A DNA stretch of 64,000 nucleotides from Isurus oxyrinchus (GCA_026770705.1 JANJGN010000121.1:868001-932000); one strand, 5' to 3'. Shown: positions 861 through 64,000, counted from the first letter of the stretch. Numbers and translations: made by a program. Notes: generated by a model from the sequence alone, not told the origin.

Positions 861-1000
861 ACAGTGGAGGAGAGATTCTGCACGTGATCCTGATCCTGGG
901 AATACGAGCTGTGATATTCCTTGTGGCTGTGGTTATCACTATCGCTGGAGTCTGTGTCTGGGAGAGACAAACAGTGAAAGGAAGTCGACAGACTGTTTGA
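861..1000 (+). CDS. Unit 0 terminal exon: transmembrane segment with Arg plus short tail (activating-type Siglec-like receptor; upstream exons lie before the window)
   Basis: Polypyrimidine/AG acceptor at 859-860. Read in phase 1 it gives xSGGEILHVILILGIRAVIFLVAVVITIAGVCVWERQTVKGSRQTV* (TGA 998-1000). The ORF track shows a different frame. Confidence 0.8.
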
Positions 1001-1139
1001 AGCTTTGTACAGCAACAATCTGGTCAGTCAGTGCGGACAAATAACGTGTGATGTTGGGTTAAATTGTAAAGAAACTGGTCAGTGTCCTGGTTAGAATCAC
1101 CTTCGTATCAGAGAGGCATTCCAGCACAGTGGGAGCCCA

Positions 1140-1720
1140 TTGAGCCCATTGAGTCCATGCTGTCTCTCTGTAGAGCAATCCAGTCAGTCCCATTCCCCCG
1201 CTCTATCCCTGTATCCCTGTGAGTTTATTTCCCCTCAAGTGTCCATCCAATTTCCTTTTGAAATCGTTCATCTTCTCCACTTCCACCATCCTCGTAGGCA
1301 GCGAATTCCAGCTCATTACCACTTGCTGTGTAAAAAAGTTCGTCCTCACATCCCCCTCTGCCCAAAACCTTCAATCTGTGTCCCCCAGTCCTTGTACCAT
1401 CAGCTAATGGCAACAGCTTGTCTTTGTCTACATTATCTAAACCCATCATCATCTTGTACACCTCGATCAGATCCCCCCTCAATCTCCTTTGCTCCAAGGA
1501 GAACAACCCCAGCTTCTCCAACCCAACCTTGTAGCTAAAATCCCTCATCCCTGGACCCATTCTACTCAATCTCCTCCCCACCCTCTCAAGGACCCTCACT
1601 TCCTTCCCAAAGTGGGGAGACCAGAACTGGACACAATACTCTAGTTGTGACCTAACCAGAGCTTTATAAATGTTCAGCATAACCTCCCTGTGTTTGTATT
1701 CAATCCCTCGATTTATGAAA
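1140..1720 (-). mobile_element. CR1-type LINE 3' fragment
   Basis: ORF 1225..1770 reads GIEYKHREVMLNIYKALVRSQLEYCVQFWSP...LGLFSLEQRRLRGDLIEVYK, the typical CR1 ORF2 C-terminus. Boundaries approximate. Confidence 0.85.
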
Positions 1721-2424
1721 AGCTTATTCTTTCCATCAGCACAAACAGCAATTTCCAAGCGGACTCCCATCAGCAGACAGAGTGCAATGAAACATCGGCA
1801 TGCCTGCTTCTTAATGTACGGAGAGAAACCTGCAACGAGAGATTCTCCTTCTTCTCCTCAGCAAGCTGAAACTTTTCCTTATACCTGGTGCACCCCAGTC
1901 CTGCTGTGTGGACACATCATAACCACGGCATTGTCTGGCTGTGTGCAGCCAACATGGTCGAATAGGAATGAACAGAAATGTGACGTTGCTAAACTCTGTT
2001 CTCTGATTGGAATGTGCTTTCTGAATGCTGCACCTTTTTCATGCTGCGATAGATTGTAAGAAGCATTTGGGTTATGAATAAAATTACATTGATTAACACA
2101 AGTGATTAAAATGCTCAGCCTGTTCTGTAGATATTTATAGATTAAAATTCTTATTTTGCTGCCAGATTCTTGGCTCAAAGACGTTACTTCATGTTGTCAC
2201 TTTTTCCAGTCAGATGAATTCCTGTGCCCATCTTTATAATGGAAATTTTCAATGTAAACATGTCACATTGCAGCTGCACACAATTGCCAGTAGGTGGTGT
2301 GATATCAAAGCTGCCTTGCTGCTCAGAAAGAGAGAGAAATATTCCTGATAAATGCATGAACTGCATGTGTGCATCAGACACTGACATCAGATGCAATTTT
2401 GTGCAATTTGTGCAATGTATTTTA

Positions 2425-3030
2425 GACAGTGCAGCACTCCCTCTGTTCAGACCCCCCAACAGTGCAGCACTCCCTCAGTTCAGACCCTCCAACAGTGCAG
2501 CACTCCCTCAGTTTAGACCCTCCGACAGTGCAGCACTCCCTCAGTTCAGACCCTCCAACAGTGCAGCACTCCCTCAGTTCAGACCCTCCAGCAGTGCAGC
2601 ACTCCCTCAGTTCAGACCTTCCGACAGTGCAGCACTCCGTCAGTTTAGACCCTCCTACAGTGCAGCAATCCCTCAGTTTATACCTTCCAACAGTGCAGCA
2701 CTCCCTCAGTTTAGACCCTCCAGCAGTGCAGCACTCCCTCAGTTCAGACCCTCCAACGGGTGCAGCACTCTCTCAGTTTAGACCCTCCAACAGTGCAGCA
2801 CTCCCTCAGTTCTGACCGGCCGACAGTGCAGCACTCCCTCAGTGCCAACACTCTGACAGTGCAGAACTCCCTCACAGCTGTCCCTCAAACAGAGCAGCAC
2901 TCCCTCGCTGCTTATCCTCCATCAGTGCAGCACACCTCAATACTGACGCGCCAACAGTGCAGCACTCCCTCAGTACTGACCCTCTGACAGGGTAGCACTC
3001 CAACAATACTGACCCTCCGACAGTGCAGAA
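2425..3030 (+). repeat. 33-bp minisatellite (ACAGTGCAGCACTCCCTCAGTTCAGACCCTCCA variant)
   Basis: Direct tandem repeats visible; they produce 11-aa periodic ORFs. Confidence 0.95.
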
Positions 3031-3221
3031 CATGCTTAGTATTTCTCCTCCAACAGCATTTTTAAATATAAACCCTCAGAGCCATGGTAGAAATTTGAAG
3101 TTAACAAACAGCAAACAGAAAGATCACAGAGTCATGATGAATTGCCAACAGTTTGATTCTGTTGTAACGCATTGTGAAATTACGCACTCATTCCTAATGC
3201 CTGTTTACTCACTCCTTTACT

Positions 3222-3361
3222 ACTTCCTCATTTTGTCTCACAGAGACACATCAACCCTTTCTCATTAAATACACAGAGGGGGCAGCACAGGAAGAGGTCA
3301 TTCAGCCCAAGCAGAGCGTGTGGGCAGTTCCTCCCCAGGCGAGCAGTCGGACAGGTCCTGG
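3222..3361 (+). promoter_or_regulatory. Unit A putative core promoter and 5' non-coding exon
   Basis: Block conserved in 4 units, starting at ACTTCCTC (Ets/PU.1-like) and ending at a GG|GTAAGT donor (3362). Confidence 0.55.
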
Positions 3362-60999: not shown

Positions 61000-61536
61000 C
61001 TGTAATTACAGCGTGACAGTTTACATATCCACACGCAGCAAGAGCTCAACAACACTCAGCTTGGGCTGAGAAATGACAAGTAACGTTCACGCCACACAAG
61101 CACCAGGCTGTGATCATCTCCAACAAGAGAGATTCTAACCATCTTCCCTTGATATTCAATCACTTTCCCATCGCTGAATCCCCCACGATCAACATCCTGG
61201 GGGATGTTACCCAAACACCGAACTGCACCGGCCATAAATACTGTGGCTACAGGAGCCGGTCAGAGGCTGGGAATTCTGCGGGGGTGAAAAACTCACCACC
61301 ACTTCCTCAAGGGCAATTAGGAATGGGTAATAAATGCTGGTCTAGATAGATACATCCACTTCCCATGAATGTACAAAAAGAAAAACACCGGCAGTGACCA
61401 TTATGTAAGTTGACATAGGAACTTAAAACAGGAAAGAACCCTGGAAATGCACATAGGCACCAAATAGAGAGAGATGTATCATGGAATCTTGCTGTGCACT
61501 GTGTTTGCTCACAATGAAACCTTTATTTGTATTTAG

Positions 61537-61818
61537 ATGCACCACGGAACCCATCAATTACTTCTCTAGATATGATTAACGCTTCATCGATCAATATAAT
61601 TGAGGGGAATTCTGCAGTGATAATCTGCTCTGTCGAGAGCTTCCCAGCTTCTAACCTGACGTGGCGACATCTTAATGTCCCAATGAACAGAACAAGTTCC
61701 AACAATGAGCTGTGGTTGGTGATTCCTCACGTTACATCCAGGGACACTGGAGACTATCAGTGTGTGGCAGAGAATGAACATGGAGCAGTGGAGGGGTTCA
61801 TAACCATCACTGTGGAAC
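61537..61818 (+). CDS. Unit F C2b exon copy 6
   Basis: 282 nt, open; starts APRNPS. Confidence 0.88.
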
Positions 61819-62657
61819 GTGAGTTACNNNNNNNNNNNNNNNNNNNNNNNNNNNNNNNNNNNNNNNNNNNNNNNNNNNNNNNNNNNNNNNNNNNNNNNNN
61901 NNNNNNNNNNNNNNNNNNNNNNNNNNNNNNNNNNNNNNNNNNNNNNNNNNNNNNNNNNNNNNNNNNNNNNNNNNNNNNNNNNNNNAAGTATACACAGACA
62001 GTCATACACGTACAAACACATACACAGGAAAATACACACCCATCTCAAACACACACACATATTCATGCCCACACAAAGACACACACATACACGTACTCTC
62101 ACTCATGGACAGACATAGACACACAGACACGCATGCATGCGCACACACAGATACATGTGTGCATACACACACAAGCACACTCACTTGTGCAGAAACACAA
62201 ACACAAACACACACATACACACATGTGAGTTCCGTGTCCTCTCTCAGTGCTGCACTGGAGTCTCAGTGTCATCTCCGAATCTGTGTTGAAAGAAGGTAAA
62301 CTCCAAATCAATAAGACCCTGAATTGGATGAGCAACCTCCTGAACAGAGAAATGTAGATTTAAACCTCAGTACTCCATCGATCAAATACAATTCATTGCC
62401 TGTCCAGCCCTTTGCGAAATCCTGAGGATGTGAAAGCAAGCTTCTTTCATTCTAGATGGACAACACCTCTACTGGTGGGAGAATGCAACTGCAGTGTGAC
62501 AGTTTACATCGGCAGTGTCAATTATAAATGTGCCATAAGACCTCATCGTGAGGGAAGTTACCTGGAAATGCATTCAGACATCAGATACAGAGAGATGATG
62601 CATGAAGTCTTGCTGTGCACTATATTTGCTCACATTAAAATCTTTCTATGTTTTTAG

Positions 62658-62939
62658 ATGCACCACGGAATCTCTCAATTACTTCTCTTGGTATGATTAA
62701 CTCTTCATCGATCAACATAATTGAGGGGAATTCTGCAGTGATAATCTGCTCTGTCGAGAGCTTCCCAGCTTCTAACCTGACGTGGCGACATCTTAATGTC
62801 CCAATGAACAGAACAAGTTCCAACAATGAGCTGTGGTTGGTGATTCCTCACGTTACATCCAGGGACACTGGAGACTATCAGTGTGTGGCAGAGAATGAAC
62901 ATGGAGCAGTGGAGGGGTTCATAACCATCACTGTGGAAT
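62658..62939 (+). CDS. Unit F C2b exon copy 7
   Basis: 282 nt, open; starts APRNLS. Confidence 0.88.
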
Positions 62940-63715
62940 GTGAGTTACTGCAAACTTCAACATCACTCTCACACAGACACACACACACACACACAAAAAC
63001 ACAACATGCACTCGTGTAGACACATACATGCACATTTACACACACAAACATACGCATGCAAAAATATACACAGAAACATACACACACTCAACTCACACAC
63101 ACACACTCACACATGCACACACATACACATACACATGTACACACATTCACTCATGCACAGAAATATACACAAAAACACACTCACATATGCGCAAACACAT
63201 ACATGCACACACAGACACATGCATGCATACTCACACAAACATACTCACATATGTACAAACACAAACACATACACATAAACACGCGTGAGGTCCCTCTTCT
63301 CTCTCAGGGCCGCACTGGAGTCTCGGTGTCAGCTCTGATTCTGTGTTGAAGGAAGGTAAACTCCAGATCAACAAGACCCTGAATTGGATGAGCAACCTCC
63401 TGAACAGAGAATGGTAGATTTACCCCTCAGTGCTCCATCAATCAAATACAATTCAATGGCTTTCAATCCCTTGGGGGCATCTTGAGAGTGTTAAACGATG
63501 TTTCTTTCATTCTAGATGGACAGCAACTCTACTGGTGGGAGAATGCAACTGCAGTGTGACAGTTTACATAGGAAATGCCCATTATAAATGTGACAGTAAT
63601 TTTTCATGAGGGAAGGTACCTGGAAAGGCATTCCAACATCAGATACAGAGAGATGATGCATGGAGTCTTGCTGCGCACTATGCTTGCTCACATTAAAATC
63701 TTTATTTATTTTTAG

Positions 63716-63997
63716 ACACACCACGGAATCTCTTAATTACTTCTCTGGATATGATTAACGTTTCATCGATCAATATAATTGAGGGGAATTCTGCAGTGAT
63801 AATCTGCTCTGTCGAGAGCTTCCCAGCTTCTAACCTGACGTGGCGACATCTTAATGTCCAAATGAACAGAACAAGTTCCAACAATGAGCTGTGGTTGGTG
63901 ATTCCTCACGTTACATCCAGGGACACTGGAGACTATCAGTGTGTGGCAGAGAATGAACATGGAGCAGTGGAGGGGTTCATAACCATCACTGTGGAAT
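63716..63997 (+). CDS. Unit F C2b exon copy 8 (gene continues beyond the window)
   Basis: 282 nt, open; starts TPRNLL; GT donor at 63998. Confidence 0.85.
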
Positions 63998-64000
63998 GTG

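What the first reader, a model, noticed from the sequence alone, without database searches (positions are those of the whole stretch)
861..64000. Paired activating/inhibitory Siglec-like receptor cluster in a probable cartilaginous fish
Seen: near-identical L, V and C2a exons are attached either to an Arg-containing TM with a 13-aa tail (861, 13559) or to an uncharged TM plus two tyrosine motifs (38260-41539). Known: the V exons carry Siglec hallmarks (C-x4-C near strand B, E-strand Cys in GDCSL, no F-strand Cys, YFFR essential Arg), C2a has the extra inter-domain Cys, and paired Siglecs such as Siglec-5/14 and Siglec-11/16 are described in primates. Inference: this is a lineage-specific, independently expanded paired sialic-acid receptor system. 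I cannot confirm from here that it is undescribed.
Basis: partly seen in the sequence, partly recalled or inferred. Interest (0 to 1): 0.85.

Follow-up and report, generated by a model that had tools for sequence, protein, structure and literature searches.

The report
Shark Siglec gene cluster, two tails
This stretch of a shark genome holds a tandem cluster of sialic-acid-sensor (Siglec-type) immune receptor genes whose almost identical outer parts are wired either to an "activate" membrane anchor or to a tyrosine-motif tail. The design is known from primates; in sharks it appears only in automatic database annotation, not in any paper I found.

Summary
All exons lie at the stated coordinates with intact phase-1 splice sites.

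- **Family:** the V exons match solved Siglec structures only. By sequence E is 1e-14 (Siglec-5, -7, -10, MAG, CD33, sialoadhesin). By predicted fold, ranks 1-45 are all Siglecs.
- **Activating chain:** RNA contigs from four studies show GT..AG joints leader→V→C2a→Arg-TM.
- **Tyrosine-tail chain:** this rests only on white-shark and basking-shark RefSeq models.

Caveats for this window:
- One activating unit is dead.
- One carries a 1-bp deletion and private changes that no RNA contig shows.
- One lost its Arg-TM exon through a junction at 21906-21911. That junction also removed the leader of the tyrosine-tail gene, leaving a possible SIGLEC14/5-like chimera.
- The proximal "ITIM" reads LLYANP and fails the consensus. 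Only TEYAQI (ITIM-like/ITSM) remains.

Assembly gaps lie in introns or flanks, inside (AC)n tracts. None cuts an exon.

RefSeq already names such proteins Siglec or CD33-like in about 18 elasmobranch species. I found no paper, and a 2020 study states that fish lack CD33-related Siglecs. This scan had already noted paired Siglec clusters on other pieces of this genome. Verdict: a new member of a known kind, of moderate interest.

The parts
861..1000 (+). Arg-TM terminal coding exon of a gene whose 5' exons lie upstream of the window (gene 0)
   Evidence: Translation and phase-1 acceptor. It is 137/140 nt identical to 13559-13698, whose splice is seen in RNA.
4452..4483 (+). Broken leader exon of dead unit 1 (7-bp deletion)
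5580..5945 (+). V pseudo-exon of unit 1 (in-frame TGA, 3-bp deletion, essential Arg replaced by Ser)
6999..7295 (+). C2a exon of unit 1; no TM exon follows it
   Evidence: Its protein is identical to a white-shark C2a.
8998..9037 (+). Leader exon of activating unit 2 (MIGKSYFLLSLLQ, phase 1)
   Evidence: RNA joint 9037→9898 in three runs.
9898..10265 (+). V exon of unit 2, with a 1-bp deletion after 10223 in this assembly
   Evidence: All RNA contigs carry the missing C.
11124..11420 (+). C2a exon of unit 2
   Evidence: RNA joints 10265→11124 and 11420→13559 in four runs.
11746..11904 (+). Half C2b relic with stops, skipped in RNA
13559..13698 (+). Arg-TM terminal coding exon of unit 2
   Evidence: GT..AG joint from C2a in four runs. 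It forms the C-terminus of 8 shark RefSeq proteins.
17672..17711 (+). Leader exon of unit 3
18572..18940 (+). Intact V exon of unit 3; this was the query for the PDB, representative and fold searches
19800..20096 (+). C2a exon of unit 3
20422..20573 (+). Half C2b relic of unit 3
21906..21911 (+). Junction with CCGATT microhomology. The pre-TM intron of unit 3 joins intron-1 sequence of the next gene. The Arg-TM exon and the next leader are both missing.
30701..31087 (+). Divergent V exon (long C-C' loop), intact, with no leader of its own
34727..35092 (+). Type-B V exon (EPSQEWKG), intact, next to the C2a of the tyrosine-tail unit
35464..35760 (+). C2a exon of the tyrosine-tail unit
38260..38356 (+). 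Uncharged TM exon (RDSSKWTVGLFTAGIMLSVFLAGIFIFICVR)
   Evidence: 90-97% identical to the TM of white-shark and basking-shark models.
39464..39545 (+). Cytoplasmic exon 1
41291..41539 (+). Cytoplasmic exon 2 with LLYANP and TEYAQI, then the stop
47597..47636 (+). Leader exon of unit 5
50108..50476 (+). Intact V exon of unit 5
52142..52511 (+). Type-B V exon of unit 5 with an extra T in a T-run; the frame breaks at the YFFR codon
52883..53179 (+). C2a exon of unit 5
53724..63997 (+). Array of eight 282-nt C2b exons at about 1-kb period (the first has an in-frame TGA). It runs off the window.
   Evidence: Lamniform predictions chain 4-5 such domains to the uncharged TM and tail.

Best explanation
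This is a birth-and-death tandem cluster of Siglec-family receptor genes in a lamniform-like shark.

**Unit layout.** Each unit has a leader, one or two V-set lectin exons, a C2a exon, sometimes C2b exons, and then one of two signalling ends:
- a last exon encoding a transmembrane helix with an arginine and a 12-13-residue tail (activating type); or
- an uncharged transmembrane exon plus two tail exons with tyrosine motifs (inhibitory type by homology).

**Likely mechanism (inferred).**
- The V domain binds sialylated glycans. The F-strand Arg of YFFR contacts the carboxylate and the A-strand Trp contacts the N-acetyl group. The variable C-C' loop sets specificity.
- The Arg-TM forms pair with an Asp-bearing ITAM adaptor of the DAP12 or FcR-gamma type.
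- The tail forms recruit SH2 phosphatases or adaptors.
- Ectodomain exons are exchanged or re-duplicated between the two types within each lineage, so both types see the same ligands.

**State of this window.**
- Unit 1 is dead.
- Unit 2 is an Arg-TM gene with a 1-bp deletion in its V exon.
- Unit 3 lost its Arg-TM exon.
- Unit 4 (the tyrosine-tail gene) lost its leader in the same junction, which leaves one chimeric transcription unit.
- Unit 5 carries a long C2b stalk array.
For: **Family.**
- The V exon hits only Siglecs at E 8e-15 to 2e-12, with the two B-strand Cys, the E-strand Cys and YFFR aligned. The next family, pIgR, is at about 4e-8.
- C2a hits domain 2 of MAG, CD33, Siglec-5 and Siglec-10.
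- The AlphaFold model has pLDDT 88. Foldseek ranks 1-45 are all Siglec V domains with TM 0.77-0.86.
- Across 304 related V domains, Arg is kept in 261, the B-strand Cys in 304, the E-strand Cys in 296, and the A-strand Trp in 186 of 208.

**Gene structure.**
- Splice sites and phases are consistent throughout.
- RNA contigs from 4 studies and 2 organisms show GT..AG joints 9037→9898, 10265→11124 and 11420→13559.

**Both tail types in relatives.**
- Eight RefSeq proteins of white shark, two catsharks and a bamboo shark end in the same Arg-TM sequence.
- 25 proteins end in the TEYAQI-type tail.

**Exchange between types.**
- Tail types interleave in the V and C2a trees.
- The activating and tail-type C2a exons are 293/297 identical, with dS = 0.

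**Junction.**
Against: - No glycan binding, adaptor or phosphatase data exist for any shark member.
- The proximal motif here has Pro at +3 (LLYANP), and the distal one is T-x-Y-x-x-I, so no strict ITIM is present.
- All RNA contigs lack unit 2's private changes. The runs share only about a third of 31-mers with the window, so they show a conserved exon chain rather than expression of this copy.
- The tyrosine-tail chain and the chimera have no read support here.
- Three V exons, one leader and one C2b exon are broken.
- The assembly has ten N gaps, so frameshifts, the junction and the array length could be assembly errors.
Confidence: 0.78

Rival explanations
1. There is no working pair in this window. 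The activating side here is decaying debris of gene birth and death: unit 1 is dead, unit 2 is frameshifted, and unit 3 is truncated. Functional activating/inhibitory pairs, if any, lie elsewhere in the genome.
For: - The unit 1 leader has a 7-bp deletion; its V exon has a stop and Arg>Ser.
- Unit 2 has a 1-bp deletion plus five private changes that no RNA contig carries.
- The Arg-TM exon of unit 3 is absent.
- V 52142 and the first C2b exon are broken.
Against: - The Arg-TM exon at 861 belongs to an unseen upstream gene that may be intact.
- The single-base indels may be assembly errors; one is in a T7 run.
- The RNA runs may come from another species, so the absence of private changes does not prove silence.
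Confidence: 0.35
2. The tyrosine-tail gene of this subgroup is not inhibitory. With LLYANP (a YxN, Grb2-type motif) and an ITSM-like TEYAQI, it may be a switch or adaptor-recruiting receptor. The cluster would then not be an activating/inhibitory pair in the strict sense.
For: - The +3 Pro breaks the ITIM consensus.
- The variant is conserved in white-shark and basking-shark paralogues, while sister paralogues keep LLYxN(I/V)NF.
- The ITIM signature is as quoted in PMC7226832.
Against: - The tail is clearly homologous to tails with a canonical ITIM.
- From memory, untested: mammalian CD33-type Siglecs also carry a distal TEYSE(I/V) motif that takes part in phosphatase recruitment.
Confidence: 0.2
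3. The junction at 21906, the frameshifts and the eight-exon C2b array are artefacts of a gapped assembly of a tandem-repeat region. The true locus would hold ordinary separate genes.
For: - There are ten N runs in 64 kb.
- Paralogous units are 96.5% alike.
- One indel lies in a homopolymer.
- The best DNA-like runs hold only 0.34 of the words.
Against: - The junction has only 6 bp of shared sequence and clean flanks on both sides. That is not what a repeat-driven mis-join looks like.
- An earlier first-reader note reports the same SP-V-C2-V-V-C2-TM layout on another piece of this genome (unchecked).
- Multi-C2b proteins are predicted in two other lamniform sharks.
Confidence: 0.2

Closest known systems
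Human Siglec-5 / Siglec-14 paired receptors and the SIGLEC14/5 fusion allele (PMC4042635, read)
   Same: - Neighbouring genes whose first two Ig domains are nearly identical.
- One has a tyrosine-motif tail; the other has an Arg in the TM and a short tail.
- Homogenisation is confined to the ligand-binding exons.
- A deletion removes the activating gene's 3' end and puts the other gene behind the activating gene's promoter and leader.
   Different: - The shark system must have arisen independently, since the primate pairs arose by primate gene conversion.
- Shark genes may carry two V-set exons.
- The shark junction lies in introns, so it keeps extra V and C2a exons (potentially SP-V-C2-V-V-C2-TM) instead of giving a clean Siglec-5 coding sequence.
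- The adaptor is unknown.
- The proximal ITIM is degenerate here.
CD33 (Siglec-3) and other CD33-related Siglecs
   Same: - V + C2 layout.
- The C-x4-C, E-strand Cys, YFFR and C-x5-C features in C2.
- A two-motif tail, proximal L-x-Y-A-x-x and distal T-E-Y-x-x-I/V.
- PDB E about 1e-13; TM 0.80.
   Different: - Only about 30% identity.
- Orthology is unresolved.
- The A-strand aromatic is Trp, as in MAG and sialoadhesin.
- Multi-V and multi-C2b forms occur.
Myelin-associated glycoprotein (Siglec-4)
   Same: - Highest structural TM-score (0.86).
- Best C2a hit (E 2e-6).
- The A-strand Trp aligns.
- RefSeq calls some shark members MAG-like.
   Different: MAG is a single conserved five-domain gene of the nervous system. 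It is not a tandem family with activating members.
RefSeq-predicted elasmobranch proteins named CD33-like or Siglec-8/10/12/13/14 (for example white shark XP_041037177, and the protein P0165)
   Same: - 88-98% identical per exon to this window.
- Same leader, V, C2a, Arg-TM or tail sequences.
   Different: - They are automatic models from other species.
- None is encoded by this window.
- I found no publication that analyses them.
Fish Siglecs as published (Siglec1, CD22, MAG, Siglec15; PMC7226832)
   Same: Same family, in non-tetrapod vertebrates.
   Different: That paper covers salmonid and percid fishes and does not mention sharks or cartilaginous fishes. It states that fish genomes lack CD33-related, ITIM-bearing Siglecs. 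The shark family is a large ITIM-type and activating-type expansion.

Membership tests
Siglec (I-type lectin) family | N-terminal V-set domain most similar to Siglec V domains | tested here: met
   - phmmer against PDB: 17 Siglec chains at E 8e-15 to 2e-12, next family at 4e-8.
- Pfam V-set and Ig_CD22 score above their cut-offs.
- Foldseek ranks 1-45 are all Siglecs.
Siglec (I-type lectin) family | Essential Arg on the F strand (YFFR) | tested here: met
   - It aligns with the YFFR Arg of Siglec-5, -7 and -10.
- It is present in 5 of 7 V exons. Exon 5580 has Ser, and exon 52142 is frameshifted at that codon.
- It is kept in 261 of 304 related V domains.
Siglec (I-type lectin) family | B-strand to E-strand intrasheet disulfide, with no F-strand Cys | tested here: met
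   The Cys of IPC and of GDCSL align with the Siglec-5/7/MAG cysteines, and the F strand reads YFF. This is shown at sequence level only; the disulfide geometry was not measured.
Siglec (I-type lectin) family | Extra Cys in V and in the first C2 domain for the inter-domain disulfide | tested here: inconclusive
   The C-x4-C in V and the C-x5-C in C2a are present, with the spacing I recall for CD33. No two-domain model was built, because the joined step was left out.
Siglec (I-type lectin) family | Sialic-acid binding that depends on the Arg | not testable with these tools
   This needs a glycan array with an Arg>Ala control.
CD33-related Siglec subgroup | Groups with mammalian CD33-related Siglecs rather than with MAG, sialoadhesin, CD22 or Siglec-15 | tested here: inconclusive
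   - Scores for Siglec-5/7/10, MAG, CD33 and sialoadhesin tie (51-58 bits). CD22 and Siglec-15 score much lower.
- A tree with mammalian references could not be built from referenceable sequences.
CD33-related Siglec subgroup | Membrane-proximal ITIM plus a distal ITIM-like motif | tested here: not met
   - The proximal motif is LLYANP, with Pro at +3. The distal TEYAQI fits the ITIM-like/ITSM pattern.
- Paralogues in other sharks keep LLYxN(I/V).
Paired activating/inhibitory receptors (Siglec-5/14 type) | Near-identical ectodomain exons joined to opposite signalling modules in neighbouring genes | tested here: met
   - C2a is 293/297 identical; the V exon with its flanks is about 91% identical over 624 nt.
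- The Arg-TM exon at 13559 and the uncharged TM exon at 38260 lie 25 kb apart.
- The C2a→Arg-TM splice is seen in RNA.
- The tail chain is seen only in white-shark models.
Paired activating/inhibitory receptors (Siglec-5/14 type) | Basic residue in the TM with a short tail, and association with an ITAM adaptor | tested here: inconclusive
   The Arg in the TM and the 12-13-residue tail are shown. Adaptor association cannot be tested here.
Paired activating/inhibitory receptors (Siglec-5/14 type) | Homogenisation of the ligand-binding exons between the two types | tested here: inconclusive
   - Tail types interleave within species. Starred branches force at least 6 switches in the V tree and 2 in the C2a tree.
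- C2a dS = 0 against V dS 0.05-0.17.
- Recent duplication is not excluded, and the counts are small.

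The most novel reading that the evidence does not exclude
The junction at 21906-21911 is a real germline deletion. It fused an activating-type Siglec gene (promoter, leader, V, C2a) to the neighbouring tyrosine-tail gene. This would be an independent shark recurrence of the human SIGLEC14/5 fusion. It would be expressed either as a receptor with three V domains (SP-V-C2-V-V-C2-TM-tail) or, through exon skipping, as an "activating" ectodomain on the tail-type anchor.
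Probability: 0.3. Interest if true: 0.65.

Novelty: new member of a known kind. Interest (0 to 1): 0.55.

Why it matters
Paired activating and inhibitory Siglecs are seen as a primate answer to pathogens that mimic host sialic acids. The published view of fish, drawn from salmonid and percid species, is that they have only the four conserved Siglecs and lack the CD33-related, ITIM-bearing kind (PMC7226832).

A large shark family shows the same logic. Shared lectin exons sit on an Arg-TM anchor or a tyrosine tail, the types are re-paired repeatedly within lineages, and this window even holds a 14/5-like fusion. That would place this arms-race design at the base of jawed vertebrates, or show that it arose by convergence.

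It also gives testable reagents: V-C2a-Fc proteins, and the Arg-TM with shark adaptors. This window adds detail (decay, the fusion, the stalk array) to a system the scan has already met on other pieces of the genome.

Tried and rejected
1. My first leader candidate, MQVLHCFSFLKP at 3599/8785/17459/47384, was wrong. Homologues showed MIGKSYFLLSLLQ, and RNA joints confirmed 9037→9898.
2. A third Arg-TM exon, a second uncharged TM or tail, and a leader between 21.9 and 34.7 kb were sought by blastn with word size 7. None was found.
3. A membrane-proximal C2c-type exon, as in white-shark P0154, was sought between C2a 35464 and TM 38260. None lies in the read sequence.
4. No database protein is encoded by this window. 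The best per-exon identity is 98%, so the species is not among the annotated sharks.
5. A phylogeny against Siglec-1, CD22, MAG, Siglec-15 and CD33-related references was not possible. No referenceable sequences of these were on hand, and PDB score ranking does not separate them.
White-shark synteny around the junction is therefore unchecked.
7. I built no joined spliced model and searched with none. Exons were searched one by one by reference, and trees were made per exon.
8. I sent no complex-prediction job, because no shark adaptor sequence was on hand.
9. Paper searches for Siglecs in sharks or cartilaginous fishes found no description.
10. Reads were laid on 8700-14500. The tyrosine-tail unit and the chimera therefore have no read test.

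Full report
**What the window is.** It is 64 kb of CpG-depleted vertebrate DNA (GC 45%, CpG o/e 0.32) with ten N runs. Earlier notes of this scan call the genome a shark. The closest proteins are RefSeq models of the white shark and the basking shark, 88-98% identical per exon and never 100%. The source is therefore probably a lamniform-like shark that is not in the protein collection.

**Exon map.** A self-comparison and splice-site reading give the following exon classes.

| Exon type | Positions | Notes |
|---|---|---|
| Leader (MIGKSYFLLSLLQ, phase 1) | 4452-4483, 8998-9037, 17672-17711, 47597-47636 | The first is broken by a 7-bp deletion |
| V | 5580, 9898, 18572, 30701, 34727, 50108, 52142 | Identical acceptor (ctctccccag) and donor (G\|gtaagt) in all seven |
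| C2a (297 nt) | 6999, 11124, 19800, 35464, 52883 | |
| C2b relics (half exons) | 11746, 20422 | |
| C2b (282 nt) | eight between 53724 and 63997 | About 1-kb period |
| Arg-TM terminal exon | 861-1000, 13559-13698 | |
| Uncharged TM | 38260-38356 | |
| Tail exons | 39464-39545, 41291-41539 | |

All Ig and TM exons start in phase 1.

**Gaps.** The three N runs at 35921-36983 lie in the intron between C2a 35464 and TM 38260, inside (AC)n tracts. The run at 41754-42015 begins 215 nt after the stop codon. The others begin 6-18 nt after C2b donors. No exon is cut. The copy number of the C2b array is uncertain for the same reason.

**Family.**
- By sequence, V exon 18572 matches only Siglecs among solved structures at E 8e-15 to 2e-12: Siglec-5, -7, -10, MAG, -8, CD33 and sialoadhesin. 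The next family follows at 4e-8, Siglec-15 at 5e-7 and CD22 at 4e-5.
- The printed alignments put the two B-strand cysteines (C-x4-C), the E-strand Cys of GDCSL and YFFR opposite the same residues of Siglec-5, -7 and -10. The Trp of QEWKG aligns with the A-strand Trp of MAG.
- C2a matches domain 2 of MAG, CD33, Siglec-5 and Siglec-10.
- An AlphaFold model of the V exon (pLDDT 88) finds only Siglec V domains in Foldseek ranks 1-45, with TM 0.77-0.86 and MAG highest. The first non-Siglec is at rank 46.
- Across 304 V domains of relatives, the Arg is kept in 261 and the three cysteines in 277-304.

Membership in the Siglec family is therefore well supported. Placement within it (MAG-like, CD33-related or sialoadhesin-like) is not resolved.

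**The two signalling ends.**
- The Arg-TM exon encodes ILHVILILGIRAVIF..., followed by ERQTVKG(S/R)RQTV and a stop.
- The other end encodes an uncharged helix and a tail with LLYANP and TEYAQI.
- LLYANP fails the ITIM consensus because of the Pro at +3 (the consensus is quoted in PMC7226832). The same variant occurs in white-shark and basking-shark paralogues, while sister paralogues keep LLYxN(I/V)NF.

**RNA.**
- Contigs from four runs (four studies, two coded organisms) were laid on 8700-14500 at 90% or more likeness. They show GT..AG joints 9037→9898, 10265→11124 and 11420→13559.
- The chain leader-V-C2a-Arg-TM is thus a real mRNA, and the half C2b relic is skipped.
- These contigs all carry an extra C after 10223, which restores the frame. 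None carries unit 2's private substitutions.
- The runs share only about a third of 31-mers with the window. They prove the exon chain in close relatives or paralogues, not expression of this copy.
It is supported only by white-shark models that read L-V-C2a-TM-tail and V-V-C2a-TM-tail.

**Relatives.**
- HMMER against 1.8 billion representatives found 32 proteins at E ≤ 1e-30, many with several V domains.
- The named hits are elasmobranch RefSeq models called CD33-like, Siglec-8/10/12/13/14 or MAG-like, from about 18 sharks, rays and skates.
- Eight of the collected proteins, from white shark, two catsharks and a bamboo shark, end in the same Arg-TM sequence. Twenty-five end in the TEYAQI-type tail.
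- Ten non-elasmobranch hits that I labelled (teleosts, amphibians, turtles, mammals) were each 34-40% identical.

**Pairing across species.** I built per-exon trees and made no joined model.
- In both trees, tail type is scattered within species clades.
- In the V tree, well-supported branches force at least six switches among eight activating rows. Catshark activating and tail-type V domains are sisters at 100/98-100 support.
- In the C2a tree, the lamniform and the carpet-shark clades each hold both types.
- In this window, the activating and tail-type C2a exons differ at 4 of 297 sites, all non-synonymous. The V exons have dS 0.05-0.17.
- This fits repeated exchange or re-duplication of lectin exons between the two gene types, as in primate Siglec-5/14 and 11/16 (PMC4042635). 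With so few sites it is suggestive only.

**State of the units in this window.**
- Unit 1 (4452-7295) is dead.
- Unit 2 (8998-13698) is the complete Arg-TM gene, but with a 1-bp deletion in V.
- Unit 3 (17672-20096) is intact through C2a. At 21906-21911 its pre-TM intron switches, over a CCGATT microhomology, into sequence that matches intron 1 of unit 5 from 83 nt after its leader.
- The Arg-TM exon of unit 3 and the leader of the next gene are both missing.
- Downstream, after a LINE insertion, come V 30701, V 34727, C2a 35464 and the uncharged TM and tail. All are open and in phase.
- On paper this is one chimeric unit, SP-V-C2-V-V-C2-TM-tail. It resembles the human SIGLEC14/5 fusion, except that the breakpoints are intronic.
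- A first-reader note reports the same layout on another piece of this genome (unchecked).
- Unit 5 (47597 onwards) has a leader, an intact V, a frameshifted type-B V, a C2a and then the C2b array. Basking-shark and white-shark predictions join 5 and 4 such domains to the uncharged TM and a canonical ITIM tail.

**Novelty.**
- I found no paper on Siglecs of sharks or cartilaginous fishes.
- A 2020 study of salmonid and percid fishes states that fish have four conserved Siglecs and lack CD33-related ones. It does not mention sharks.
- Against this, RefSeq pipelines already label these genes.
- The scan had already noted and followed up paired Siglec clusters on other pieces of this genome.
- I class the finding as a new member of a known kind. 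The junction is the only item particular to this window.

**Tools and limits.**
- The joined spliced model was left out by instruction.

Noticed in passing
window 53724-63997: Eight near-identical 282-nt C2b exons lie at about 1-kb period, each followed by an (AC)n tract. The first has an in-frame TGA. Pairwise dN/dS ranges from 0.2 to 2.7 on very few changes. Basking-shark and white-shark gene predictions chain 5 and 4 such domains to the uncharged TM and an ITIM tail. A first-reader note already covers this array.
   Followed up: partly
window 58843-60963: A Penelope-like retroelement fragment sits inside the C2b array. It has a GIY-YIG ORF at 60139-60465 (Pfam E 1.5e-5), and its arms at 58843-59718 and 60123-60963 form an inverted repeat that is 89.5% alike.
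   Followed up: partly
window 2426-3028, 7507-8174, 15046-16863, 40563-41142 (inverted), 53295-53593: The same 33-bp minisatellite recurs between gene units and inside the tail intron. It is a possible substrate for unequal recombination in the cluster.
   Followed up: no
window 41291-41539 and proteins P0151, P0154, P0166, P0199, P0174, P0175: The proximal tail motif LLYANPQVF (Pro at +3, with a YxN inside it) is conserved in lamniform paralogues. Sister paralogues keep LLYxN(I/V)NF. Its signalling meaning is unknown.
   Followed up: partly
protein P0166 (white shark): This predicted isoform joins the leader directly to C2a, the TM and the tail, with no V domain. It resembles the V-less CD33m isoform of human CD33.
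   Followed up: no
window 8970-9037 and 17644-17711: An upstream ATG (MKYLGVD...) precedes leader 8998 out of frame with MIGKSYF and is lost before leader 17672. In catshark and bamboo-shark proteins the same ATG is in frame and extends the signal peptide.
   Followed up: no
window 23793-25638: LINE reverse-transcriptase ORFs (Pfam RVT_1) lie in the 8.8-kb stretch between the 21906 junction and V 30701.
   Followed up: partly
protein P0009 (sawfish, named MAG-like): A relative has V-C2a-Ig-TM and a tail with YQEL-x7-YSEL, which is an ITAM-like motif inside the receptor itself.
   Followed up: no
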